From: Macrostomum lignano
Lineage: Eukaryota
DNA: 64,000 bases
Assembly (NCBI GenBank): GCA_002269645.1
Contig: NIVC01000264.1
Span: forward strand, 124,001-188,000
Direction of reading: 5' to 3'
The position numbers and the translations under genes were made by a program. The notes beneath the pieces were generated by a model, which saw nothing but the letters and a program-made list of their open reading frames with translations, was not told the origin of the DNA and did no database searches. Shown here piece after piece: positions 35,751 to 64,000 of the stretch. Within the stretch, counting starts at the first letter, position 1; each line of letters starts with the position of its first letter.

Positions 35751-48163
<12,413 letters not shown>

Positions 48164-49328
48164 CCGCCCTGCCCTGCACTCTGAGCGCGCAGTTTACTTG
48201 TACAAAGTATACGTTTCGTTGTTTTAATGCTTTTCTGAATTGCGTAATTTGATTGGAGAATTCCAATTGGTTAATGACATGATAGCTTCTGATTGGCTGC
48301 ATGGACTGGGCACTCGAGATGTAGAGTAGCTTCTGATTGGCTGAATGGTCAGATCCGATATCGCTTTTGATTGGCTACTTTGTCTACTTTTAATACACTA
48401 ATCAATCAATGCTTATTACAGTGTACATATGCCTTCCCTGCTTACCAAAATTTTATACCAAGTAACTGTAGTACTTACTGCATGCTACAATAGAAGAAAA
48501 ATCAAATTGTCAAATAAAAAATTGGCGTTTCTAAAAGGGAGTCTGCTGTCTGACAAAGTCAACTGACACTGACTGTCTAGTCTGTACTTGGGACCGCATA
48601 GCATTCGGATGAATTCGATTGTATTCGCTCCGTTTATCCAACTACTAAAGCCAGACAAAAGGCAGGCAGAGAGATAAGCAGACGGCGATCCTCGCCATGA
48701 CCTGGCCGAGTCTGGTTGCTGTCCCGGCCTTGCGCAATTTGACCGATTATCAGGAGCAGACTGTGTATGACTAAACAGCTTCCAGCCCCCAATGTCCTGC
48801 CGGATATCTACTGAACCATATCGCTGCAGGAACTGCATGGGAGCAACCACTTGAAACCGACGGAGGCACCGGCTTCATTAATGCTTGCTAAGTTTTATCC
48901 AGCCTCCCGTGTGCCTCCTCTCTGTCCAGTCTCCCACTCCATCAGGCGCACAAGTAAAATGAATCTGTTTGACCGAAGAGACCCCTAGTGGACCGCCACG
49001 GTGCTTCGGTCACTCGCAAATTTCTCCTGCAAAACACCTACTAGCCTACTGTAAGTGATACGCATACGAGTTGAAGAGTTTTCCGATCAAACCGATTACA
49101 GTAGGTTTTATAAGAATAGAAAAATCAGGAATATGATTATCAAATATATTATTAGCAGTGAAAACTGGTTGCAAGAAACAAAGTCGTTTAGCGCAGACAA
49201 AAATATTTTTCACACTGTACGAGTTGACTGCTGTCTGTGCTGATCTGATCTCGTGTGTTAAAATTCGTTGGTGAATCGTCACTGGGGAGGGTACACTGGG
49301 GATAGAAAAGCAAACCTCAACCTTGCAG

Positions 49329-49575
49329 CTCGCTAAGCCAATCAGCGAGCAGAATGACCGTCCAAGTGTACACTGGGGATAGAGATGCAAATCTATCTAA
49401 CCCTCGCTAAACCAATCAGCGAGCAGAATGACCGTTCAAGTGTACACTGGGGATAGAGATGCAAATCTATCTAACAGTCGCTAAACCAATCAGCGAGCAA
49501 AATGACCGTCCAAGTGTACACTGAGGATAGAGATGCAAATCTATCTAACCCTCGCTAAACCAATCAGTGAGCAGA
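49329..49575. repeat. 74-bp tandem repeat x3.3, each unit with CCAATCAG and ATGCAAAT
   Basis: CTCGCTAA recurs at 49329 and 49403, with later copies at the same spacing. Confidence 0.9.
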
Positions 49576-49877
49576 ATGGCATTAAGTGAGAAGCGCTCTT
49601 CTAAACCAGGTACCACTCAGAAAAGACACATTCCAGTTGCATGATTATCAACTCACGGACAAAAAGCGAAGGAAACTCGGATCGTAAACTTACATTACAG
49701 TTTAGAGTAAAAGCAGAATCATGAAAATATTCGCTAAAACAAATACAGCTAAGCTACCAGTAACGCGTATTTGTACCTAACTGATTGAATAATAAAAAAT
49801 CAGCTTAAAAAGTAAAGCACTGTTATTAATGACTGTCGTGTTGCCCTAGTTCGTTCTATCGAAAAGTTCAGGCTGGA

Positions 49878-51690
49878 TTATTCCTTCGGCTGGTTGATGC
49901 GGCCGGCAAACAGCACACTGTTCGTGGCCTCATCCTTGATCAGCACCAGGAATGGCTCGGTGACAAAGAACGGCATCATCATTGGCATGCTGAAGCAGGC
50001 GATGGCAACGGCGGTGACCGCAGCGGCCTCGGCGCCCTCCTCGTTCACCTCCAGGCAGGCCTTGTGCACCACCTTGGACACGAACAGGTTCTCGGCGGTG
50101 CTGATACCGCTCAGGTCGGCGTGGCCGCGCTCGAACAGGCGCTTCACGCCCATGGCCGGCAGGTACTGGGAGTCGCTCAGCGAGAACTGCGTCTCCACCT
50201 GCAGAGGCAAATTTTATTTTATTTGGTTATTCCTCTAGATCGATAAGTTTACGCATAAAATTCCCACTGAGCCAGTGGGTCAGGTTTGTTATTCTGGGTC
50301 AGGCTAGGGTCATTCTTTATGTATTTCTAGGTCAGACAAGGTCATTCTGGGTCAGGCTAGGGTCACTCTTCATGTATTTCTAGGTCAGACAAGGTCATTC
50401 TGGGTCAGGCTAGGGTTATTCTTTATGTATTTCTAGGTCAGACAAGGTCATTCTGGGTCAGGCTAGGGTCATTCTACATGTATTTCTAGGTCAGACAAGG
50501 TCATTCTGGGTCAGGCTAGGGTCATTCTACATGTATTTCTAGGTCAGACAAGGTCATTCTGGGTCAGGCTAGGGTTATTCTTTATGTATTTCTAGGTCAG
50601 ACAAGGTCATTCTGGGTCAGGCTAGGGTTATTCTTTATGTATTTCTAGGTCAGACAAGGTCATTCTGGGTCAGGCTAGGGTCACTCTAGTTCAGGTTAAG
50701 CAGCACCGACAAAAGCAACCCACCTTGAACCTGGGCAGGTGCAGGTCGACCTCCTGCTCAGTGGCGGAGCCAGCCAGAGCCAGGATGTCCTCCAGACTGC
50801 CAACAGCTTGGAGAGCGGCGGACAGACCGTGGCGCTCAAACGGCAGCACGATGAGCATGCTGCAGCTGCCGCCGGCGAACGGCAGCTGGACAATTCTCAG
50901 ACCGCGACCTTCGGCGTAGGGAAACTGCTGCGTCTGCTGCATCATCCGAATGGGAGACTGGCTGCCTGGCGCCGACTCGAATTGTCCGTCGTAGGTGCTC
51001 TCCGGGTTGAAGGTGTGCTTCCAGTCGCCCTTAAAATAGATGGCGTTCACCAGCACTAGGCGAGTGTTGGAGTCCAGGGAGCCTCTGTCGGGTACAATAG
51101 TTAATGCGAGCGCAGTTGTAAAGTGCATTTAGAGTACTAATAAGCTGACGAGGCAAATTTCGTCTATTACTCGAATACTTTATTATCCCTTTTTAACGCA
51201 AAAGAAACCCACAAAACAATAGCATTTTTTTCTGGCCTTACTGAGCGAGCAGCTCCCTGATCTTGCTGCTGGTCTGCTGCTCCACCCACTGGTTGATGGC
51301 CTCTCTAGCAGCTTCGCACTGCTGCTTGAAGTCTACACTGCCCAGCTTGGCTCCGTAGCTCTTGGCCAGGGTGCCGCTGAACTCCGCCTCGATGGCGAAG
51401 CTTCTCTCCGCGAACAGCCGGTTGGCCACCGCCAGCTTCACGCCCTGACGTCCGCTGTTCAGCGCCGAGATCAGCCGGCCCATGTCCGAGTGCGGAGACT
51501 TCAGCTGGCTCAGGTGCAGAGCCTGCGACAGCTCCGCCTCGGTCTCGGTCTTGGCTCCGGCCAGGGTCATGGCGAGGGCCACCTGCACAGAGGCTGGCGA
51601 CAGAAACACATTCTCAGACTTGTGCTGCTCGATCACCTGGTTCAGCAGCGACCAGGCGAAGCGGACGGCGCTCTCGGTTAGGCTGGACAT
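49878..51690 (-). CDS. Intracellular serpin A (no signal peptide; loop EEGAEAAAVTAVAIACF-SMP), 3 coding exons
   Basis: Exons 51690-51242, 51084-50724, 50198-49878; phases match. Serpin motifs: NVFLSPASV, VANRLF, INQWVEQQTSSKIRELL, LVNAIYFKGDW, LHLPRF, VSKVVHKACLEVNEEG, PFLVLI..VLFAGRI. Confidence 0.95.
50285..50690. repeat. 53-bp tandem repeat, ~8 copies, in serpin A intron 2
   Basis: ATTCTGGGTCAGGCTAGGG recurs every 53 bp. Confidence 0.95.
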
Positions 51691-52791
51691 TCTCGGGATT
51701 GCTGCTGAGAAGGGGGACGCTCTGAGCTTTAAAAAGGCGATTGTTTAAGAAGATTTTTTAACAAGTGGAGAACCGCACCTACAGAGAGGCTACATATATG
51801 TGTTGCCTAATGCCTATAACCAGACCACGCATACGACACGACGCCAAGTCTGACTTGGTCCAGTCCAGTCCAGATTAGATATGCGGCGCCGCCCATGCCT
51901 TCAAAAAAAACACAGTTATCCCTCCCTAGTCAAGTCAAGACAGTGCCAGGGCGAATGGAAAGAAAATGGGGGTTGGGGTTTCGGGTAGAAGGAAAGATAA
52001 GCGAGGCGCAAAGGCTTGGTTGGGTTGGCTGGGCTGGGGTGGGGCACACACGCCCGCCCCGTACACGGGAAATGTACATTGAGGCCGAATAGCCAACCCC
52101 CCACTATACGATTCCACTCCTCCACTTTGCTAACACTGGCTGGACAATTTTAGTCTTAACCCTATACTACGGTTGGGCGGCCCGTTAGAAAAGCCAGCTG
52201 GGACAACAGCAAATGAAATGAATTGAATGCCAATTTAAAGTCGCGTCTATTTGTCTGCCAGCTAGGTGACCATGCGCCTGCCTGCTTTCAAGGGTCTCTT
52301 TCATTTTAAAAGAAGGCAATAAAATAAATTCTTACGAGTACGGAGTACCCATAATGACCAGTCATTTCATTTCACCCCGACCCCAGTGGAGATGATTAAT
52401 TGCTTAATACTAACATTTATCTCAGTCTCTCCGAATTTCGAAACACCGTCAGAGAAAGTAATAAGTTAAAGTACTCGAACAGATTGAGCAAACAGAAGGC
52501 AGCTGATTCTGCCTAATCTCTGCTGCTATTCTTTGTCGCCACCTGTGTATTTAAACTGTAAAATACAGCAAAATATGAGACTATATATAATACGTTTCTT
52601 TATGCACCATTGTTTAAACGTTATGAATATGAATTACTAGCTCGTAGCTACTTCAGTATCTTATTCAGTTGTTTAGAAAACGGTATATTTAAATTTTACG
52701 GTGTGAAGTCAACACCACACCGTCAGCTAATGAGCGATTGCCAAATCTCTAACGCTACAGTTTCAAATGGCAAAGTGTACTTAAGTTTAGC

Positions 52792-55700
52792 TTATTCGCT
52801 TGGCTGAGTAATTCTACCAGCAAACAGCACACAGCCCGTGCTTCTGTCCAAGATCAACACCAAGAAAGGTTCATTAACATTGAAGGTCACGCTGTCATCC
52901 TCCAGTTTCGCGCAGTCTACAACACAAGTGGCGGTGGCTGCAGCAGCCTCGGCGCCCTCCTCGTTCACCTCCAGGCAGGCCTTGTGAACCACCTTGGACA
53001 CGAACAGGTCCCTGGAAGACTTGCTGATACCGCTGAGGTCAGCGCAGCCCTCCGTGAACAGGCGCTTCACACCCATGGCTGGCAAGTACTGGGGATCGCT
53101 CAATGTAAACTGCGTTTCCACCTGCAAAGGAGAGGAAGGATTGGTTGCAGATGTGAGCTTGGCTTGGACTGGGCCAAATCTGGTTACGATGTGTCGGAAT
53201 CGGTCATTAACGATCATACCGCTGGGTCATGAAGTAGGCTAAATGCATACTGAACTTTGGGTGAATTGGATTTGATCTATTCAGGGTACATTACATCAAT
53301 TTACGATGATAGCAGCATTACGGATACTTGCTTATATAAGCTATTTTTCGGTAAGTTCTGTACACTCACTAGCTAATAAAGGCACTATCAATTGTAGGTA
53401 GCTGTTATGTGATCCAATTACATGTATGTTGCGATAAAATCGTGGTTGTAACCATGCACGAGGGGAGATGTAACTCGCTTCTTTAGGAGTATTGGCATTT
53501 TATTTTACGTAGAAACTAGTAAATATTTGTAAGTAAGTACTCATAAGTATTAAAGCAGTAAAAAGTTCATAGTGCACCATATGAGCATGAACAAGGATCC
53601 TGGTTTTGTACAGGTCAGTAAGACTGGAGTAAGACCGTCATTGGCCACAAGGAAAAATCTTATTGCTCTTCTGCCAGACCGAGTCCCGCTGCAACGCCTC
53701 AATCGGATGCCACAAAGACCCGGTGACTCTCTCGTGCGGCCTGCTGCAGATCAAAAGCACCTACTGGATTGACGCCTCAGACTTGCCGGAAAACCTATTA
53801 GAGGAGGTCTGCGTAATTTATGAGTCTATAACATTCCGACCATAAACCCTGACCCAAACCTAAATTGTCGGCAGTCAAATGGCTGGTAGTCAAATGCTTG
53901 ACAGTCACATATCGGGCTCCTGCAGTCTATAGGACTTAAATAATTCATTTTAATATCCATATCCTTGCTCCGTTCTTATTCCCAAACCAAACCAGACTGG
54001 ATGACCTGCACTACTGGGTTACAGAGTCTGCTTGTGCTCTGCTATATGGCAAGGTATGGCAAATATTGCTCAGGCGGAAGACAGCCAACCGATGAGTTGA
54101 AGAAAATGGCTCTTTGTTCAAGTGTGTTCGACAGACGGTGTGTTTGACCATTTGTGCAAAGCTTCTTTATGGGTTTAAAGATACATTTAGCTACGGGTCC
54201 ATCGATGAAGAAATGTCGCTTTAGCACAACCGCTGAATTCACAGGACTATGCTCGCGTTCACAATGGCGGTCCACTAGGTAAGACAAGAACACCTCACTA
54301 ATGTGAATTCAGTGGTTGTGTTAAAGTGACATTGCTTCATCGATGGCTACTGGAAGAAGAAATGTTTAAGAATTCGTCTGCCTTGTGTGTATATGAACAC
54401 TTGGCGTCGCAAGTATCAGTTTGATGTGCCCTCTCTGCAATTTAAGATGCACTCTCGGTCTGCCGATTCAATAGAATCATGCAACTCTCGCCTGCTGCTG
54501 CAGCCTGATGATTCTTATTTAAGTTGCTTATTAGTTAGTCTTTACAATTCAAACCCTTAATTTTCTCGGTAGCAAACAAATACAACAAATGCTCCTATGT
54601 AACGAAAGGCTTCCTTGTTAGAACGAAAGACCTCCGTTCCTTGTCTGCTCCGGCCCTGCCGTTGTTGACCCTGCAGCTTTAGCCCTCCCCTCGATAGAAT
54701 TGAGTCTCATCAGCTCAGTCGAGTAAGGTTGAGTTGATCTGAATAAACAGCTTCACTAAATAACTGACTAAATTTTATCGGGCGGACGTCATTAGAAGCA
54801 CGCGTGTGTTGCCTTTGCGTTCGTTCTTTGGGACAGACCAGCCATTTGGAACGGACAGACCTGTGCGTTCGTGCGACCCTGGTTGTCGGCCTTACTGCCA
54901 GCATGTGTAGTGCGAAATTTTGAACCTCACTAATCATTCAGAGCGCGGACAAAGCCGGCTGGTCCATCTCGGGACACAATTTCGTTGTATAGATCATAAA
55001 GTCAACCAGAAACACTCACCTTGAATCGAGGCAGGTGTAAGTCAACCTCTCGCGCCATAGCCTGACGCGCCAACTCCAAGATGTTGTCTAACCGAGCTTC
55101 AGACTTTAGAGCCGCGTCCAGCTGGTGCCGCTCCTGCGGCAGGACTATTACCATGCTGCAGCTGTCACCAGCGAACGGCAGCTGGACAAGACGCAATCCG
55201 CGACCTTCAGTGTAGAGAAAATCGCGTTTGTTCTGCATCATCCGCACGGGAGACTGGCTGCCCGGCACCGACTCGAACTGTCCATCGTAGGTGTCATCTC
55301 GGTCGAAGGGGTCCATCCAGTCGCCTTTGAAATAGATAGCGTTCACCAGCACAAAGCGAGTGTTGGTATCGAGAGAACCTCTGAAAGTGTTACATTGTTA
55401 GCTATCTGTGATTAATTGAACCTACTTAAAAAGTTTTAAAAGCAAAAAACGTTAACTTACTGCATACTACTCAAGTTAATAGCTTGAAAGACGTAATCAA
55501 GTTTTTTAAAGCATTTAAAAAAATCTTTACTGAATACACAGCCGTATTGAGAATATTATGTGGTTTTTGTATACAGTACGAAGTCGTGTCCTAAAGATTG
55601 AAGTAACATGAAGGAGACATTGATTTACCTATTAGCTATTAGCTTAGCTAGCTTAGCTTAGCATTAGCTATTTACGGCTACAAGACCAATCTAACTGAGA

Positions 55701-56195
55701 CGTTCTAAATCCAAGAGGTTAAATTTTCTAGCTTAGCTTAACTCACCGTGCGAGCAGCTCCCGGATCTTGCTGCTGGTCTGCTGCTCCACCCACTGGTTG
55801 ATGGCCTCTCTAGCAGCTTCGCACTGCTGCTTGAAGTCCACACTGCCCAGCTCGGCTCCGTAGCTCTTGTCCAGGGTGCCGCTGAACTCCGCCTCGATGG
55901 CGAAGCTTCTCTCCGCGAACAGCCGGTTGGCCACCGCCAGCTTCACGCCCTGACGTCCGCTGTTCATCGCCGAGATCAGCCGGCCCATGTCCGAGTGCGG
56001 AGACTTCAGCTGGCTCAGGTGCAGAGCCTGCGACAGCTCCGCCTCGGTCTCGGTCTTGGCTCCGGCCAGGGTCATGGCGAGGGCCACCTGCACAGAGGCT
56101 GGCGACAGAAACACATTCTCAGACTTGTGCTGCTCGATCACCTGGTTCAGCAGCGACCAGGCGAAGCGGACGGCGCTCTCGGTTAGGCTGGACAT
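52792..56195 (-). CDS. Intracellular serpin B (loop EEGAEAAAATATCVVD-CAK), 3 coding exons
   Basis: Exons 56195-55747, 55380-55020, 53121-52792. Intron positions and phases are the same as serpin A, with the full set of serpin motifs. Confidence 0.95.
54199..54346. other. 45-bp inverted repeat with a 58-nt spacer in serpin B intron 2
   Basis: 54199-54243 versus 54302-54346: 41 of 45 positions are Watson-Crick complementary. Confidence 0.85.
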
Positions 56196-57379
56196 TCTCG
56201 GGATTGCAGTTTCTGCTGAAATGCACCGAGAAAATACAGTCAGTACAGCAGTCTTCGAAAATCGAAATTTCCGAAAATCACAAATGTACTTTCAACAGTT
56301 GCCCTATCCATGGCCATGCACTTTATCATACCCATTGTATCGCATCTCAGTAACAAATAGGCAACTAGCTACTGGTTCCCTTGTTGGTCCCACTTACATT
56401 AAGTTATGAAACCATTATGGAGTATTCCATTTTTTAAACAACAGATATCCTTTGGGGTATCCCTTAACCAACACCAAGTCTGTTTTAATCAACACAAAGT
56501 TCTAAGAAATTCGTCTATAAGTTCCCTGCACTTGTTGCTACTCGTAAACGACTTTGTTGGTCGTAAATTTTCGGAAAGCAGTCTTCAGTAAAATTTATTC
56601 ATCGCTGACTTCATTCGTACACGGAATCATTATCAAGCATAGCTGCATGTCACCAGATGCATGAGTTCAGTTTCTAGTAGTTCACAAAGCTAATTCACGC
56701 TCTTAATGCATTCGATGCGCACTGAATCTTAATGCATGGCGTTACACGTACGCGGCAGCTTTCAATCGAAGCGTTTTGCTCAGTCGTTGCTTTTTTGGCT
56801 TATTAGACATCAAATACTATGACACCAATTGTGCATTGTTCTCACACTCTTGCTCGCCCTGACGCATTTAAAGTGAGACATTTCGGTTTGGCGTTTGGCA
56901 CCTTTGCGTGTATCCGCTTCAGGTCTATATACAAAAGTAATTAACTGGAAAGTCGATCTGTTGTTGAGTTCTGCTGATTTTTTGTTAATGAAGCAATTTG
57001 ACTTCGAGTAGCAAAATGGCTGCCCCCTTCACTACAGGGATACAGTGTCTGCCCGGCCATATTCCCGATTTCCAATGCACGTTGAATCACGCTGATCTGT
57101 GAGTGAACACTGACTATTTTATCGGTTCTCAAATTGTATGTCGTGTTTCTCAACGCCCAAAATCTGGACTAACGTGACTTAGCAAATTATTAAAAGTTTT
57201 CTTACGATGCTGTAGCTAAAACCAAGACAAGGCGCCAAGCATGCAAAGGCGCCAAAATGCTAAATAGGTAACAAACAAAATGGGCACCGAAATGCCTGGT
57301 AACCGATGTTTTCGACTCAAACCCTGATGCTGAGTACTTCCGATATACAATCTACCGCAATAGTACATTGTTTAGTCAA

Positions 57380-57752
57380 GGACTACTCAAGTTGAGTCAA
57401 GTATGAATAGTACAAAAGTCTAGGATGCAGGTTTTACCGAAAATACAGTAAAAATACAGGAGAATAGAGGTTTTCATTTTTTCAGCACAAAATTTGTTAT
57501 TGCTTTTGATAGAAGGTAGACCCAATGCTTATCTTTTGATATGTCTTGCCTTTTAGTACATGTTGGGTGCCTAAAAATCATTTAAATGGCACAGCTTGAC
57601 TCATGGGTTTCATGAATATATTTTGTCATTCTTATTTGACTGTGCAATAAAATGTGTAACAGAGCGATAAAATGGATTCTTAAAAAAACCAATGAATCGA
57701 GCTGTGCCATTCTTTATGAAAATGAAAAGCCGTCCTTCTACTTGAGTGGTCC
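57380..57752. mobile_element. Possible degenerate MITE with nested inverted repeats
   Basis: GACTACTCAAGT (~57382) pairs with ACTTGAGTGGTC (~57740). AATGGCACAGCTTGACTCATGGG (~57585) pairs with CCAATGAATCGAGCTGTGCCATT (~57689). Confidence 0.45.
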
Positions 57753-60192
57753 TTGTGTTTAGTATGCACCACAGATACTAGAATAATATGATATTTATTA
57801 ATTAGTTATTCTAGCCTTTTAATAGCTATACTTAGCATTTTAAGTATTGCCTTCAATCGATTTATACGTCGAGGCTGGAGAGAGCTGGGAAAGGCTTTTT
57901 ATCACTTTGGTTGGCTTTTGCAGTCTATGGCCCACAGACTTAGGCAAGACGCAGCCAAGGCCCCTCGTCACTTCAGCATTTGATTTCGTCCATTGATACA
58001 CGAAAGCCATAGAATAGGATCGTGTGCCACTAAAAAGGCACACTGCGTTTAATTTCGTCAACATTACGAAGCCATAGCCATAGAACATGAAATGACAAAC
58101 ACTAACTTGTAAGGAAGCAGCAGTCTGAACAGAGCAGAAAGTTTCCGGTAATTGACGGCAACCATTCAGCGATGCTTTTCACGTTGAGCCATGGATAGTT
58201 TCTTAGACGAAATCTAAGGCAGTTTTTCCCGAAATCCATTTCTTGTCTCTTCATTTATCCCACACTGCTTTGGCTATTTTGTTTTCCCAAAAGCCCTATT
58301 TGCAATGAATGAAGCTTGAAAAAATCAAACGCTGAAGTGACGAATTCAATCGTAAACGGTATAGCATAAAGGTATAGTATAGTTATAGCTTATTTCCTTA
58401 TCTGTCCTATGACCTTGATTTAAATATCGGGCAAAGCACGAGCGCGCGTGTTTTCTGGCAATTGTTTAACAAAGCTACACACTATAGACAAGTGTATTGT
58501 ATATATCGTATTTGCCCGGCACAGATGTCATTTTTCCACACTAGAGAGAAAAATAAGAAGGGTTGAAGCCGTCGAACAGATGATAAAGTTGGGAAAATAG
58601 TCACGTGAGTTGTAGAATCGTATAAAAAAGTTGCGAAAGAGTCGTCCTAAGAATCTTTGTGCCAGTGCTTAACTTTCGCTTTCTTATAACTGACTCTAAG
58701 TCACGAAGCGACGCAAATGCGCTTCAAACACATCTCAGTGACTCTAGCAGGTCTCAAATACGACTCAACGGCTCCAGAGTCACTTGCGTCACCCCAGAGT
58801 CGTTTCAGAGTTGCAGACAACAAAACGCTGTAAAATTGATTCCAGGGCGACTCTGACGACTTTTAGAGTGAGAAAGATCTCGTCGCTTTAGAGTCGTTTA
58901 GGGTCACTTCTTGCAAAAACTGATTGCCTATGAAATTTTATTCTTATGATTCTTATGCCACAAACTTCAAAGCACATACCAGTTAGTTACTGAACCCATT
59001 TCCGTTCATACGATTTCGAACGAATAGGAAGGGATACTGCCATCTGACTGCCGATGATTTAGGTTTATGGGCTTAGGGTTAGGTTCGGGTCAGGTTTAAG
59101 GTTGGAGTTGTTTTTTTTGGAGCTGCCGAACGTCTCATAAGCCTAATTAACAGTTCCATTAGAACCAACAAAAGTACGCAAAAAATCTCATGCATTTGAC
59201 TAGACGATTGCTATGGACTAAAATCGGTTGTAAAATTGAAAAAAAATGCAATGCATTAAAAAGGCGTGCAGAAAAAATTGTAAAAAACGCAACAATAGGT
59301 GAGAGCAGAATCTCTAGGGCTAGAAGACAAATATATTTTACTAGTGTAATACCAGTATTCATACAGGCCCCAGCAAACAATCAAAGCTTTTTAAGAAGAA
59401 AAGTTACTTTTTTTACAGAACGGGATCAATCAAGCTACTTGTTTGAGAAATCACTTGTACTTGTAAGTTATCAATAAGTTTATCATTTGTGATAGAATAC
59501 AATTTTATATAAGCGATACGCGTATAGGCTTGGCCTATTTTTGGCGGAAATCATTAGCAAGAAAACAGAGAAAGTCACTTTTAACTTTACTAAAAAAGCA
59601 ACTTGAGGTACGTAAGCTACAAGATTTATTGGGAGGGGCTACAGACCCAACCGCAAAGCTCGAATCTAATGATTCCCTGACTGTTAACACTGGAAAATGA
59701 TTTCAAATTTATTCAATACAATTTAATTCATTTTGTCATCACTCGGATTAACCATTGGGTGGCATTAAAGCACAGGGAAAGGTGGGCGAACGCCCCCGAC
59801 TGAAGGCAGTCCCGTGAGGATGTCCCTTAGTCCCTCCCCCACCCTCCGCTCCGCACAAACCCAGATCTCTTTAACGTTTTCAGGTCCGAGAATTTCTTCC
59901 GCTACCTAAGGTCTACCGGGCGAGCGACCATCCACCTCCTGGACTCTCCGGAAGTGCTCCCCCTCTGCAGCTGAGTCAAGAAAGTTGATGATTGGTCTTC
60001 AACTATATCGACTTTGATTTGGCAATTAATCAACAATTGATTAATAATCGCAGCTTTTCCTACCGCTTGAAGAGGATTTTTCGGCAGGTTAAGTCCCTCA
60101 TCTTTGCCAGTCTCCAATAGAATTTCGGATTTCCAAGAGCATTCATAACTCGCTCTAATGCCTAGTTCATGCAAGCTCAACAACCAATTGAT

Positions 60193-61695
60193 TTAAAACA
60201 CTGGCGACTCCTGCTGCTCCAACTGCAGCTTCCTGCCGCCGTCTGCTACTCCTCGGGCGTCACCTTCGCCGATGTCGCCGCGAGTGGGTTTTGGCGGCCT
60301 GGCCAGCAGCTCCACCAGGGCTTCCAGAGCCGCCTGACTCTCCACGAAGCCGGCATCGGCGGCGCTGGCCAGCTCGGCAGCCAGATGGCCACAGCGGAGC
60401 CGGTCAGCCTGGCGCAGGGCCCGCACCGTGTCGCAGCTGCCGTCGCTGCCGCCACCAGCAGCTTCAGAAGCAGCTCCCGCTGCAGTGCCGCCGCCGCCGC
60501 GCTGCGGGGCCAGGTGGGTCCGGCAGACCGGCAGCACCTCCATAGGCAGGCATTCCATAGCGCCGCCGGAGACACCGCCGGAACCCGGATGCAGCTGCAG
60601 CGCTGTTGTGTCCGTCACCAGAGCCTGAAGTAGGTAAATGTACGCTGCATTGGAACTCATGGCACACTCTCCCGATATACACGGTGCCCAGGCCAAGAAG
60701 TGTCCCAGAGTGACTTGCATCGCCCCAGAGTCGTTGCAGATGACACAGGTAAAATAGGAAAATACTCTAAACGACTCTAAAATGACGAGATGTCACGGTA
60801 CAAGTCGCCAAAAAGTCGTCAAAGACTCGCCCAATAATCACTTTGAAGTGTTTTATTATCTGCGACTCCAAAATGACTCTGAGGCGATGGTATAACGACT
60901 CTGCCGGCCGTAGACTAGTCACTGATTAGTATTTGAAGCACTCTAACTAGCCTGCTGAGTTAGTAGACAGTTAAGCGCCAGCACAACGATTCTTTAGATG
61001 ACTCTTTTAAGCATGCATTCATAGCCCTGAGTTTCTCATTGTGCCATTTTTCCGGAATCGAACCCGGGACTTTGGTGCTAGATCAAGTCGAATTAAATTG
61101 ACAGAACCACTCATTTGCCCTCTTTTTTCCAGTAATATGAAGCGGTGCCCAGAAGCTGACCACTCAGCCCCAATAGCCAAGAAGAGGGTCCACTCCAGCC
61201 CACCTGAGTAGTGGCATCCCTGACGTGCTGCACCAGCACCAGCAGCAGGTCGGGCTGTTTAAACTCCTCGCACAGCCGCCTGTGAATGTGCGCCTCCTTG
61301 GCTGACAGCTGCACCAGCTGCGGCTGCTGCTCCGGCCGAAGGCAGTCGCCGATCCGGCGGCGATACCAGCCGATAACGGCGCCGTCGGTGGCTTCGGCGG
61401 CGGCCCGAGCGGCGGAAGTGGCGCCGGAGACGGCCAGACGGGGCAGCGGCGCAAGCGACACGACCCGGTAGAGCCGGCTGGCCGTGGTGGCGGCCTCCGC
61501 CTGGTCGGTCCTGACGGTGCGAGACTCCAGCTCGCGGCTGCCCAGCAGGAGGCCGTCAGGCGGATCGAGCTGGGCGCACAGGGCAGCAAACTGCGGCGAA
61601 GGCAGCGAGACGTTGCCGGCAGTCGCCGCCGCAGCGGTCGTCGATGCGGGGGCGCTGAAGCCGCCATTGGTGAATTCACCGCCTGGGCTGAGCAT
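60193..61695 (-). CDS. ABRAXAS1: Abraxas family MPN- protein with a C-terminal SPxF motif (BRCA1-A complex subunit Abraxas 1-like), 2 coding exons, ~307 aa
   Basis: Exons 61695-61204 and 60624-60193 (phase 0, GT-AG). MPN- blocks: VSLPSPQFAAL..DGLLLG..TDQ, AVIGWYR, LSAKEAHIHRRL..DLLLVL. Ends ESPVF-stop. Confidence 0.82.
61045..61120 (-). pseudogene. tRNA-like relic (tRNA pseudogene or SINE head) in the Abraxas intron
   Basis: The minus strand reads ..AAAGTCCCGGGTTCGATTCCGG, a good B-box/T-arm. The A-box is degenerate and I could not build a convincing cloverleaf. Confidence 0.35.
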
Positions 61696-61779
61696 GGAGA
61701 GTCTGCAGCGACATGAATTAACAAATTGGATTTGCAGTCCAAGTGAAATATTTTAAACTACGGCCAGATCTAGTTAGCT

Positions 61780-62225
61780 CATCACGTGATTAAGATGACG
61801 GCATCACGTGACTGAACACAATTGCATCACGTGTTAGATAGCGACATCATGTGACTAAAGAAAATGAAATCATGTACCTAAGAAAGTTACATCACGTGAC
61901 TAAAGAAAGTTACATCACGTGACTATAGAAAATGACATCATGTGACTAAAGTTACGTGGCATCACGTGACTAAAGACAGTGGCATCACTTGACTAAAGAC
62001 AGTGGAATCACGTTATTGAAGACAGTGGCATCACGTGACTAAAGACAGTGGAATCACGTGATTAAAGACAGTGGCATCACGTGACTAAAGACAGTGGAAT
62101 CACGTGATTAAAGACAGTGGCATCATGTGACTAAAGACAGTGGCATCACGTGACTAAAGACAGTGGAATCACATGATTAGACAGTGGCATCACGTGACAA
62201 AAGAAATGGCGTCACGTGACTAAAG
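61780..62225. repeat. ~23-bp minisatellite (AAAGACAGTGGCATCACGTGACT) with 13 CACGTG E-boxes, upstream of Abraxas
   Basis: Counted by eye. Confidence 0.88.
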
Positions 62226-62839
62226 AAAATGATATCAATATGAGAGCGATTATGAAGAACACGAATTCCACTTTAATCAAGGCAGTTTAGAGGTGATTAA
62301 TATAATAGAATATACAGAACCTTGTGTTGACAACCTCTTACTTAGAGAATCGTCAGGGGGGTCAAAAGTCAGTCTTCTCTTCTTATTAAAATCTAAATTC
62401 TACACTGAAGTAATTGAGCAAAGATATTTTCAAAAATTCATAAAAACTGAATGAAGATCAACAGAAAAGTTCAAGTATATTAAAGCTCATGAAGTTTAAC
62501 AACAACATAAAATCTGATTTGAAAAAACCAATCAGACTACTCGCGAATGACAGTGAGATGCGCAAAATGGCCTACTGATTGCCAGTAGTATCGAACAAAA
62601 TGAATATTGCTACAGCAAAAAGTCGTGCTGAAAATGCATTGAACGATATACTCGTATTGTTTAATTCTTGATAGAAATTGATTAAAAATCATCGATGATG
62701 ACAAAAATTTTTATGATTTTTGCAACGGCTAAAAACGACAAAAACACGAAAGAGCAATTTAAGTCCCACAAGTTTTAACTTTCATTTTGTTTTAAATGAA
62801 AAAATACATGCGATAGTGTAAAATATTCAAATCTAACTG

Positions 62840-63425
62840 TACATAGTACATTGTCTCCCGCGCTAACCTTATCCGCCGACTCTGTCCCAATGTACATTGT
62901 CACCCGCGCTAACCTTATATCTCCACTCTGTCCCAATGTACATTGTCTCCCGCGCTAACCATATTTCCACTTTGTCGCAATGTACATTGTCTCCCGCGCT
63001 AACCATATTTCCACTCTGTCCCAATGTACATTGTCACCCGCGCTAACCTTATGTCTCCACTCTGTCCCAATGTACATTGTCTCCCGCGCTAACCTTATCC
63101 GCCGACTCTGTCCCAATGTGCATTGTCTCTTGCGCTAACCTTATCCGCCGACTCTGTCCCAATGTACATTGTCTCCCGCGCTAACCTTATCTCGATTCTA
63201 TCCTAACTCCTAATGTACATTGTCTCCCGCGCTAACCTTATCCGCCGACTCTGTCCCAATGTACATTGTCTCCCGCGCTAACCTTATCCGCCGACTCTGT
63301 CCCAATGTGCATTGTCTCCCGCGCTAACCTTATCCGCCGACTCTGTCCCAATGTACATTGTCTCCCGCGCTAACCTTATCTCGATTCTATCCTAACTCCT
63401 AATGTGCATTGTCTCCCGCACTAAT
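62840..63425. repeat. ~45-46-bp tandem repeat (TGTACATTGTCTCCCGCGCTAACCTTATCCGCCGACTCTGTCCCAA)
   Basis: About 13 copies with variants. Confidence 0.93.
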
Positions 63426-63650
63426 ATTTCCCCGTAAAAACGCCTGAAAATCAAAAGAAATGTAAGGACACGAAGAGTCCGATCTCGAATGCCCTCGGAT
63501 AACCTAAATCGAGCTATTTTGTTCCTGATCAATTGCTAAATTCTCAAACAGCTACTGAAAGTAGAAAAAAATAACTTTTTTCACAAAACAGACAACCGGA
63601 ACCGGATTAACTACTAGCGGTTAGTAGCATTTGATTATAACAATTTTGTG

Positions 63651-64000
63651 TCAGAACTCGCCGCGTCTGACCGGGCCAGCAGCCATGTCGGCGCAGTGGG
63701 CGGGCGCGCCCGGATCGGCCGGGTCGTAGGCCAGACAGGCGGACCAGAGCGCCGCAGGCAGCAGCGCCAGCAACGACAGGGCGGCGAGGAGAGCCAGCAT
63801 GCCGGCTGGGCCGCAGGCGGAGCCGAAGCGAGCCAGGCAGAGCTGAGCAGCCAGCCAGACTGACACAAGCAGCAGGCCGGCCGCTTCTCGGCCCTCCTCG
63901 TGCGCCAGAGGATTTCTAGCTAACGACTGCTGATGTTGGTTGCCATGGAGACTGGTTGGTAGCAGGGCCGACTGGAGCAGGTAAGCGAGGCCCGACAGGC
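63651..64000 (-). CDS. 3' end of a probable multi-pass membrane protein, truncated by the window edge
   Basis: The frame is open from 63998 to the stop at 63651: LSGLAYLLQSALL..AAGLLLVSVWLAAQLCLARFGSACGPAGMLALLAALSLLALLPAALWSACLAY..GEF. It is GC-rich with two or three hydrophobic segments; family not recognised. Confidence 0.6.
   Translation of the reverse strand, partial: LSGLAYLLQSALLPTSLHGNQHQQSLARNPLAHEEGREAAGLLLVSVWLAAQLCLARFGSACGPAGMLALLAALSLLALLPAALWSACLAYDPADPGAPAHCADMAAGPVRRGEF

What the first reader, a model, noticed from the sequence alone, without database searches (positions are those of the whole stretch)
52900..52962. Serpin B has a CrmA-like reactive loop (CVVD-CA): candidate endogenous caspase inhibitor
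Seen: EEGAEAAAATATCVVDCAK, with Asp 16 residues from the hinge Glu and followed by Cys-Ala; there is no signal peptide. Established: cowpox CrmA has EEYTEAAAATCALVAD-CAS, with the same spacing and P1 Asp followed by Cys-Ala, and inhibits caspase-1/-8 and granzyme B. Mammalian SERPINB9 uses VVAE-C against granzyme B. Asp-P1 serpins are uncommon in cellular genomes. Inference: a cytosolic cross-class inhibitor of initiator caspases, giving host-encoded control of apoptosis or inflammation that could matter in a regenerating, stem-cell-rich animal. By standard P17 counting P1 would instead be Cys, so the assignment needs testing.
Basis: partly seen in the sequence, partly recalled or inferred. 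Interest (0 to 1): 0.75.

Follow-up and report, generated by a model that had tools for sequence, protein, structure and literature searches.

The report
Flatworm cytosolic serpin with Asp-Cys bait
This is an intact protease-inhibitor (serpin) gene of the flatworm Macrostomum lignano whose bait loop carries an unusual Asp-Cys pair, so it could block cell-death proteases (caspases) as a cowpox virus protein does, but the sequence cannot show which protease it traps.

Summary
Window 52962..52906 (minus strand) encodes EEGAEAAAATATCVVDCAK, in the last exon of an intact 3-exon, 379-aa serpin. The window is Macrostomum lignano contig NIVC01000264.1.

The protein has no signal peptide, an inhibitory-type hinge, and a confident native serpin model with a disordered loop. 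Its closest relatives are vertebrate clade B serpins (SERPINB1, B3/B4), not poxvirus serpins.

With the hinge Glu (P17) as residue 1, Asp is residue 16 and Cys is residue 17. Cys is therefore the canonical P1, and Asp sits in the 16-residue register that the literature gives for CrmA. HMMER aligns this Asp-Cys with SERPINB1 Phe343-Cys344, both of which are used as P1 residues. Both registers are therefore workable.

An acidic residue here is rare, about 1% Asp at position 16 in diverse relatives. An Asp-Cys-Ala match is still expected by chance about 5 times across the superfamily.

The gene is the fast-evolving copy of a tandem pair. Its body is under purifying selection, and its loop is identical in three genomic copies.

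Caspase inhibition is the leading hypothesis (about 0.35) but is untested. Rival targets are a serine protease cutting after Cys and a papain-like cathepsin. This is a new member of a known kind, of moderate interest.

The parts
55747..56195 (-). Serpin B exon 1. The ATG is at 56195, and the GT donor at 55746-55745 follows the exon. It encodes residues 1-149 plus 2 bases.
   Evidence: It is 98.4% nucleotide-identical to serpin A exon 1.
55020..55380 (-). Serpin B exon 2 (361 nt), which includes the s3A motif NAIYFKGDW.
   Evidence: tblastn gives 100% identity.
52792..53121 (-). Serpin B exon 3. It encodes s5A, the hinge, the reactive centre loop, s1C-s5B and the stop codon.
   Evidence: The AG acceptor is at 53123-53122.
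52906..52962 (-). Hinge plus reactive centre loop, EEGAEAAAATATCVVDCAK (P17 to P2' by canonical counting).
   Evidence: In the AF2 model the stretch from P9 to about P6' is disordered, with pLDDT below 50.
52912..52917 (-). Asp (52917..52915) and Cys (52914..52912), the two candidate P1 residues, at positions 16 and 17 from P17.
   Evidence: HMMER aligns them to SERPINB1 Phe343-Cys344.
52891..52905 (-). LEDD-S on the prime side of the loop, a second (L)ExD-type Asp site. Its last Asp is 23 residues from P17, and the site lies just before strand s1C.
   Evidence: It lies in the part of the loop that is 2 residues longer in B than in A and in SERPINB1.
49878..51690 (-). Serpin A, the tandem paralogue (exons 51690..51242, 51084..50724, 50198..49878; 376 aa). 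It is the slowly evolving copy, with loop AVAIACFSMPMMMPFF.

Best explanation
Serpin B is a functional, intracellular, inhibitory serpin of Macrostomum lignano that resembles clade B serpins. It is the fast-evolving copy of a tandem pair whose other member (A) keeps a conserved loop like that of SERPINB1. Its exposed reactive loop offers two adjacent scissile bonds. One is Asp|Cys in the 16-residue register used by CrmA and by SERPINB1 Phe343. The other is Cys|Ala in the canonical 17-residue register used by SERPINB1 Cys344.

The most likely purpose of the derived Asp is to bait an Asp-specific cysteine protease, meaning a flatworm caspase. The caspase would cut after CVVD and be trapped when the loop inserts into sheet A. 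That would give a host-encoded brake on caspase activity.

Shown here: gene structure, serpin fold, hinge, absence of a signal peptide, the register, the rarity of Asp, and the selection pattern. Inferred: inhibitory activity, use of Asp as P1, a caspase as the target, and any biological role.
For: Intact serpin:
- The spliced ORF is intact and matches Pfam Serpin at E 1.8e-109.
- The AF2 model has pLDDT 90.8, a native fold and a disordered loop.
- The best fold matches are clade B serpins.

Inhibitory hinge:
- The hinge EEGAEAAAATA is identical to that of the SERPINB3/B4 chain 4zk0.
- It fits the consensus ExGTEAAAA for inhibitory serpins (PMC8233489).

Register and rarity:
- The Asp is in the 16-residue register reported for CrmA (PMC4493575).
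- It aligns with the functional P1 Phe343 of SERPINB1 (PMC11327461).
- Position 16 is hydrophobic in nearly all close relatives, and Asp is unique to this gene among the 120 best hits.
- Asp at position 16 occurs in about 1% of diverse representatives.

Selection:
- Nearly all amino-acid change lies on the B branch. dN is 0.21 for B against the other-species orthologue, versus 0.057 for A.
- The B body is still constrained. dN/dS is about 0.2-0.25 outside the loop and about 0.8 in the loop.
- The loop is identical in three genomic copies that differ at five residues elsewhere.

Precedent:
- Characterised serpins with Asp at P1 target caspases or granzyme B. Examples are Serp-2 and CrmA (PMC3458838) and NbSPN14 (PMC11741654).
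- M. lignano has caspases (PMC11463336).
- Granzymes are a vertebrate family (my own knowledge).
Against: - By canonical counting P1 is Cys, and it aligns with the P1 Cys344 of SERPINB1.
- CVVD lacks the P3 Glu and P4 Asp that most caspases prefer (my own knowledge of caspase specificity).
- There is no homology to CrmA beyond the shared superfamily.
- The Asp-Cys-Ala match is expected by chance about 5 times among serpin clusters.
- No orthologue of B was found in another species, so conservation of the Asp cannot be tested.
- There are no expression or biochemical data.
- Loop hypervariability after duplication is the norm for serpins and need not point to caspases.
Confidence: 0.35

Rival explanations
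1. It is a canonical serine-protease inhibitor that uses Cys as P1 in the 17-residue register, as SERPINB1 does. It would protect the cytosol against an elastase-like or other S1 protease from granules or the gut, and the Asp would be only an unusual P2.
For: - HMMER aligns the Cys with SERPINB1 Cys344, and SERPINB1 is the best solved relative at E 2e-78.
- Cys is the commonest residue at position 17 among close homologues, 67 of 127 loops.
- Seventeen residues is the near-universal loop length (PMC4493575).
- Asp at P2 occurs in a working flatworm serpin, FhSrp1 (PMC7437470).
Against: - Position 16 is hydrophobic in almost all relatives, so Asp is a radical change.
- An acidic P2 fits poorly in the hydrophobic S2 pocket of elastase-like enzymes (my own knowledge).
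- This reading does not explain the extra acidic LEDD insertion on the prime side.
Confidence: 0.25
2. It is a cross-class inhibitor of papain-like lysosomal or gut cysteine cathepsins, with a cytoprotective role like that of SRP-6 and SERPINB3. Val at position 14 or 15 would dock in the S2 pocket, and cleavage would follow position 15 or 16.
For: - The hinge is identical to that of SERPINB3/B4, which are top sequence and fold matches.
- Intracellular serpins that block cathepsin L prevent lysosome-dependent death from nematodes to mammals (PMC8755814).
- Cytoprotection is proposed as the ancestral role of intracellular serpins (PMC8233489).
- SERPINB3 is cut by cathepsins one residue before canonical P1, with a hydrophobic P2 (my own knowledge).
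- Flatworm digestion relies heavily on cysteine cathepsins (my own knowledge).
Against: - An acidic P1 is generally disfavoured by cathepsins L and B (my own knowledge).
- Nothing in the loop is specifically like SERPINB3 or SRP-6.
- The conserved copy A, with its hydrophobic loop, is at least as good a candidate for this role.
Confidence: 0.15
3. The loop has no dedicated target. B would be a drifting duplicate, a decoy or substrate cut at LEDD|S or elsewhere, or a serpin gated by a redox-sensitive Cys-x-x-x-Cys pair in the loop.
For: - Loop dN/dS is about 0.8.
- No orthologue was found outside M. lignano.
- The second Asp site, LEDD-S, is too far from the hinge for trapping (PMC4493575).
- Two Cys residues flank VVD.
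Against: - The body is under purifying selection.
- The ORF and loop are intact and identical in three copies.
- The hinge is fully of the inhibitory type.
Confidence: 0.15

Closest known systems
Human SERPINB1 (leukocyte elastase inhibitor, clade B)
   Same: - It is the best solved relative, at about 40% identity and E 2e-78, and its fold matches.
- It has no signal peptide, is of similar length and has the same kind of hinge.
- It uses two adjacent P1 residues, Phe343 and Cys344 (PMC11327461). These align exactly with the Asp-Cys of serpin B.
   Different: - Position 16 is Asp here instead of Phe.
- The prime side of the loop is 2 residues longer and acidic (LEDD).
- Orthology with vertebrate clade B was not established.
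Cowpox virus CrmA and poxvirus SPI-2/Serp-2 (cross-class serpins with Asp at P1)
   Same: - They are intracellular serpins.
- Their Asp lies in a 16-residue P17-P1 register (PMC4493575).
- Asp at P1 is needed for inhibition of caspases and granzyme B (PMC3458838).
   Different: - They are not close relatives. No CrmA entry appears among the 60 sequence matches listed or the top 50 fold matches.
- Serpin B is host-encoded rather than viral.
- P4 is Cys and P2 is Val here.
- Whether serpin B inhibits any caspase is unknown.
Human SERPINB9 (PI-9)
   Same: It is a cytosolic clade B serpin with an acidic P1 followed by Cys.
   Different: - P1 is Glu in the canonical 17-residue register.
- Its physiological target, granzyme B, has no known flatworm counterpart.
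Nosema bombycis NbSPN14 and bovine SERPINA3-1/-3
   Same: - They are non-poxviral serpins reported to inhibit caspases.
- NbSPN14 does so through a predicted P1 Asp348, and mutating that residue abolishes the effect (PMC11741654).
- Bovine SERPINA3-1 and A3-3 inhibit caspases 3 and 8 (PMC4593666).
   Different: - NbSPN14 is a secreted parasite effector.
- The bovine proteins are clade A serpins.
- Neither is a close homologue of serpin B.
C. elegans SRP-6 and human SERPINB3
   Same: - They are intracellular cytoprotective serpins.
- SERPINB3 has the same hinge, EEGAEAAAATA, with Ala at P14 (PMC8755814).
   Different: They target papain-like cathepsins, and their loops have no Asp at this position.

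Membership tests
Serpin superfamily (PF00079) | Full-length match to the serpin domain profile | tested here: met
   E 1.8e-109, protein residues 8-377 against profile positions 3-370 of 370.
Serpin superfamily (PF00079) | Native serpin fold with an exposed reactive centre loop | tested here: met
   AF2 gives pLDDT 90.8 and pTM 0.89, with only the loop disordered. Foldseek gives TM 0.88-0.93 to SERPINB3/4, SERPINB1, PAI-2 and MENT.
Inhibitory serpins | Hinge consensus from P17 to P9, ExGxEAAAA, with a small uncharged P14 | tested here: met
   The hinge is EEGAEAAAA with Ala at P14, identical to the SERPINB3/B4 chain. The consensus is given in PMC8233489.
Inhibitory serpins | Loop insertion (stressed-to-relaxed transition) and a covalent or tight complex with a protease | not testable with these tools
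   This needs recombinant protein.
Intracellular serpins of the clade B (ov-serpin) type | No N-terminal signal peptide or extension, and no C-terminal extension | tested here: met
   The domain starts at residue 8. The N-terminus has no hydrophobic core. The protein ends 2 residues after the conserved C-terminal Pro.
Intracellular serpins of the clade B (ov-serpin) type | Phylogenetic placement with chordate clade B | tested here: inconclusive
   The best hits are SERPINB1-like proteins at 39-43% identity, but bacterial and other invertebrate serpins score similarly. No tree was built.
Cross-class caspase inhibitors of the CrmA/SPI-2 type | Asp at the scissile P1 position | tested here: inconclusive
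   The Asp is at position 16, the CrmA register according to PMC4493575. Canonical counting and the SERPINB1 alignment put Cys at P1. The cleavage site is unknown.
Cross-class caspase inhibitors of the CrmA/SPI-2 type | Sequence or fold kinship with poxvirus SPI-2 serpins | tested here: not met
   No CrmA entry appears among the 60 PDB sequence matches listed or the top 50 fold matches. Clade B serpins are closest.
Cross-class caspase inhibitors of the CrmA/SPI-2 type | Measured inhibition of a caspase | not testable with these tools
   This needs a biochemical assay.
SERPINB1-type serpins with two reactive sites | Two adjacent residues at positions 16 and 17, each usable as P1 | tested here: inconclusive
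   The positional equivalence of Asp-Cys to Phe343-Cys344 is shown (PMC11327461). Use of either residue as P1 was not tested.

The most novel reading that the evidence does not exclude
A free-living flatworm encodes its own serpin brake on caspases. The gene arose by duplication of a SERPINB1-like gene and converged on the Asp-Cys bait and the 16-residue register that poxviruses use. That would make serpins, alongside IAPs, an endogenous layer of apoptosis control in an animal rich in stem cells. The flanking Cys pair or the downstream LEDD-S site might add a switch.
Probability: 0.3. Interest if true: 0.7.

Novelty: new member of a known kind. Interest (0 to 1): 0.4.

Why it matters
Well-documented endogenous caspase inhibitors in animals are mostly IAPs. 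The efficient serpin inhibitors of caspases are mostly encoded by pathogens, such as poxviruses and a microsporidian. A host-encoded cytosolic serpin using Asp as P1 in a flatworm would show that this solution also evolved within animal genomes. It would also give a tractable handle (RNAi is available in M. lignano) on how cell death is restrained during regeneration and tissue turnover.

If the target instead proves to be a serine protease or a cathepsin, the gene is an ordinary case of a serpin duplicate gaining a new function through its reactive loop. Either way, the public gene model at this locus is wrong and hides the loop.

Tried and rejected
- **Alternative loop exons.** I looked for mutually exclusive loop exons, as in Drosophila Spn42Da, in the long intron 2 and between the genes. 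tblastn finds only the six exons of A and B.
- **Orthologue of B in other species.** The full-length search found only M. lignano copies and an A-type orthologue from another transcriptome, P0002. Conservation of the Asp therefore could not be tested.
- **Expression or functional literature.** Searches for Macrostomum plus serpin, for the three gene identifiers, and for planarian plus serpin plus caspase gave nothing specific.
- **CrmA register.** I did not fetch or write out the viral sequence. I took the 16-residue statement from PMC4493575. A search for the phrase 'one residue shorter' found nothing.
- **P0123 as a natural recombinant.** P0123 joins the B body to the A loop. I rejected it as a real allele because the window is 100% identical to its contig. 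The model spans both genes and switches inside exon 3, within a stretch of about 40 nt that I read as identical in A and B. An annotation or assembly chimera is the likely cause.
- **Legumain as an Asp/Asn-specific target.** I judged the prior low, because legumain is lysosomal or luminal and no serpin inhibitor of it is known to me.
- **Loop-only database search for xVxD-C motifs.** I did not run it. The word-based search needs exact 5-mers and would not recover degenerate motifs.
Full report
**What is there**

The window is Macrostomum lignano genomic DNA. A 10,333-bp stretch (window 58210..47878) is 100% identical to contig NIVC01000264.1 of assembly GCA_002269645.1. The best protein hits are M. 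lignano proteins.

Two serpin genes lie in tandem on the minus strand, each with three exons and GT-AG introns.
- Serpin B: exons 56195..55747, 55380..55020 and 53121..52792; 379 aa.
- Serpin A: exons 51690..51242, 51084..50724 and 50198..49878; 376 aa.

Both match Pfam Serpin over the whole domain, at E 1.8e-109 for B and 5.8e-112 for A. tblastn finds no further serpin exons in the window, so there is no cassette of alternative loop exons.

**The observation**

The reported peptide EEGAEAAAATATCVVDCAK is encoded at 52962..52906 on the minus strand, in exon 3 of serpin B. With the first hinge Glu (P17) as residue 1, Asp is residue 16 and Cys is residue 17.

The protein has no room for a signal peptide:
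- The Pfam domain starts at residue 8.
- Helix A begins at about residue 3 of the protein.
- The N-terminus has no hydrophobic core.
- The ATG is the first possible start codon in its exon.

**Is it a working inhibitor?**

The hinge EEGAEAAAATA is identical to that of the SERPINB3/B4 chain 4zk0. It fits the consensus ExGTEAAAA for inhibitory serpins (PMC8233489). SERPINB3 also has Ala at P14, and mutating that residue to Arg inactivates it (PMC8755814).

An AlphaFold2 model built from 45 aligned sequences has pLDDT 90.8 and pTM 0.89. It shows a native serpin in which only the stretch from P9 to about P6' is disordered, and strand s1C starts right after LEDDS.

Foldseek puts SERPINB3/B4, SERPINB1, PAI-2 and MENT on top, with TM scores of about 0.9. 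The best sequence match among solved structures is human SERPINB1, at E 2e-78. No CrmA entry appears among the 60 sequence matches listed or the top 50 fold matches. Any likeness to CrmA is therefore confined to the loop and is convergent.

**Which residue is P1?**

HMMER aligns the Asp-Cys of serpin B with the Phe-Cys of SERPINB1. SERPINB1 uses both residues. Phe343 serves against chymotrypsin-like proteases and Cys344 against elastase-like proteases (PMC11327461).

The distance from P17 to the scissile bond is almost always 17 residues. CrmA is one of the few serpins reported with 16 (PMC4493575).

So the Asp sits in a register that works both in CrmA and in the closest solved relative, and the Cys sits in the canonical register. 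Sequence alone cannot decide between them.

**How unusual is the Asp?**

| Sample | Position 16 | Position 17 |
|---|---|---|
| 127 hinge-loop matches in the 126 proteins held then (the 120 best homologues plus M. lignano cluster members) | Phe, Leu, Met, Cys, Tyr, Ala or Val in most; Asp only in the M. lignano B copies | Cys in 67 |
| 181 other serpin domains from 150 diverse 50%-identity representatives | Asp in 2 | Asp in 0, Glu in 4 |

The two other domains with Asp at position 16 come from a centipede model and a midge model. In the midge loop the Asp is followed by Arg.

Acidic residues here are therefore rare. Under independence, however, Asp16-Cys17-Ala18 has a probability of about 1.3e-4 per serpin. 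That gives roughly 5 expected cases among the 43,227 serpin clusters detected. The resemblance to CrmA is not statistically remarkable. What matters is whether this loop, however it arose, is used by an Asp-specific protease.

**Evolution**

A syntenic locus on contig NIVC01000052.1 is about 97% identical to the window. I read it as homeologous or allelic. It carries the same B-then-A pair.

Nei-Gojobori distances:

| Comparison | Region | dS | dN |
|---|---|---|---|
| A vs B | exon 1 | 0.029 | 0.009 |
| A vs B | exons 2-3 | 0.84 | 0.22 |
| A vs B | loop, P8 to P10' | 1.14 | 0.90 |
| A vs the other-species transcript L001 (encodes P0002) | exons 2-3 | 0.685 | 0.057 |
| B vs L001 | exons 2-3 | 1.36 | 0.21 |

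- Exon 1 of A and B has been homogenised, while their introns and flanks cannot be aligned. This points to a gene-conversion tract of about 460 bp.
- An A-type orthologue from another transcriptome (Logan SRR28338164/5) is 85% nucleotide-identical to A. It keeps the A loop almost unchanged.
- Almost all protein change is on the B branch, yet dN/dS for the B body stays near 0.2-0.25.
- The B copies in the window and in the syntenic locus differ by 4 synonymous and 3 non-synonymous changes. The three predicted B proteins differ at five residues in all, none of them in the loop.

B is therefore a constrained duplicate that has acquired a new loop, not a decaying copy. No B orthologue was found in another species, so conservation of the Asp cannot be assessed.

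**Mechanism**

*Best reading (about 0.35).* The derived Asp baits an Asp-specific cysteine protease. In a flatworm cytosol the obvious candidates are caspases. M. lignano has several caspases, including one with an unusual kinase-like pro-domain (PMC11463336). Granzymes are a vertebrate family (my own knowledge). Characterised serpins with Asp at P1 act on caspases or granzyme B. Examples are Serp-2 and CrmA (PMC3458838) and the microsporidian NbSPN14 (PMC11741654). Bovine SERPINA3-1 and A3-3 also inhibit caspases 3 and 8 (PMC4593666).

Points against this reading:
- Canonical counting places Cys at P1.
- CVVD lacks the P3 Glu and P4 Asp that most caspases favour (my own knowledge).

*Rivals.*
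- A SERPINB1-like serine-protease inhibitor that uses Cys as P1 (about 0.25).
- A cytoprotective inhibitor of papain-like cathepsins, like SERPINB3 and SRP-6, with Val in the S2 pocket (about 0.15; PMC8755814).
- No dedicated target, a decoy, or redox gating (about 0.15).

**Additional features of the loop**

The prime side of the loop contains LEDD-S (52905..52891). This is a better match to the (L)ExD caspase consensus than CVVD is. Its last Asp is 23 residues from P17 and the site lies right next to s1C. Cleavage there should be substrate-like rather than trapping (PMC4493575).

Two Cys residues bracket VVD (Cys-x-x-x-Cys). This could make the loop redox-sensitive. That idea is speculation, based on my recollection of how Cys oxidation affects the SERPINB9 loop.

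**Comparison with what is known**

The gene is a member of the serpin superfamily and of the intracellular type that resembles clade B. It works like, but is not related to, the Asp-P1 cross-class serpins. I found no paper on it or on any flatworm serpin linked to caspases. One study that included a single M. lignano serpin noted only that it does not cluster with parasite serpins (PMC7437470).

I rate it a new member of a known kind.

**Annotation problem**

The public gene model at this exact locus is PAA86785.1 (Mlig013530g1). It spans both genes and joins the B body to the A loop. The CVVDC loop is therefore missing from the annotated product here. It is present in the models of two other copies, PAA92409.1 and PAA54694.1.

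**Verdict**

Caspase inhibition is the leading hypothesis but is untested. Interest is 0.4.

Noticed in passing
window 49878-56210 (minus strand): The public gene model at this locus, PAA86785.1 (Mlig013530g1), spans both serpin genes. It yields a chimera of the B body with the A reactive loop, switching inside exon 3 within a stretch of about 40 nt that I read as identical in A and B. It looks like an annotation or transcript-assembly artefact, and it hides the CVVDC loop.
   Followed up: yes
window 55747-56207 and 51242-51702: Exon 1 plus 12 nt of 5' leader is 98.4% identical between serpins A and B (dS 0.029). Exons 2-3 have dS of about 0.84, and the introns and flanks cannot be aligned. 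This indicates a gene-conversion tract of about 460 bp limited to exon 1. The same pattern is seen at the syntenic locus L003.
   Followed up: partly
window 52891-52905 (minus strand): LEDD-S lies on the prime side of the serpin B loop. It is a second, more canonical (L)ExD-type caspase-like site, 23 residues from P17 and next to s1C. It lies in the part of the loop that is 2 residues longer in B than in A or SERPINB1.
   Followed up: partly
window 52912-52926 (minus strand): Two Cys residues bracket Val-Val-Asp in the loop (Cys-x-x-x-Cys). This could act as a redox switch on the loop. The idea is untested.
   Followed up: no
window 49878-50198 (serpin A exon 3); L001/L002: The serpin A loop AVAIACFSMPMMMPFF is unchanged except for the P9 residue in a transcript from another, probably congeneric, species (Logan SRR28338164/5; 85% nucleotide identity). 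It carries Cys-Phe where SERPINB1 has Phe-Cys, so A looks like the conserved, SERPINB1-like member of the pair.
   Followed up: partly
window 50291-50687: A 53-bp tandem repeat of 7.5 copies, 96% matching, lies inside intron 2 of serpin A.
   Followed up: no
window 40868-41786, 43508-44597, 45311-45615, 46446-47683: A dense run of satellites lies downstream of the serpin pair: a 20-mer x46, (ATAG)x273, a 20-mer x15 and a 14-mer x90. They create long spurious ORFs, such as the SIYL repeats.
   Followed up: no
window 38666-39070 and 39786-40805 (plus strand): ORFs with cadherin domains (Pfam PF00028, E 2e-13 and 7e-29) are likely exons of a cadherin or protocadherin gene. They are flanked by GA-rich 19-mer repeats at 38000-38509 and 39087-39733.
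   Followed up: partly
L003 1-6079 (syntenic with window about 59900-64000): At the syntenic locus, the annotated genes upstream of the serpin pair are an RMI1-like gene, a TMEM220-like gene and a 302-aa protein with no Pfam hit. In the window, the 61111-61695 (minus strand) ORF tested in that region also has no Pfam hit.
   Followed up: no
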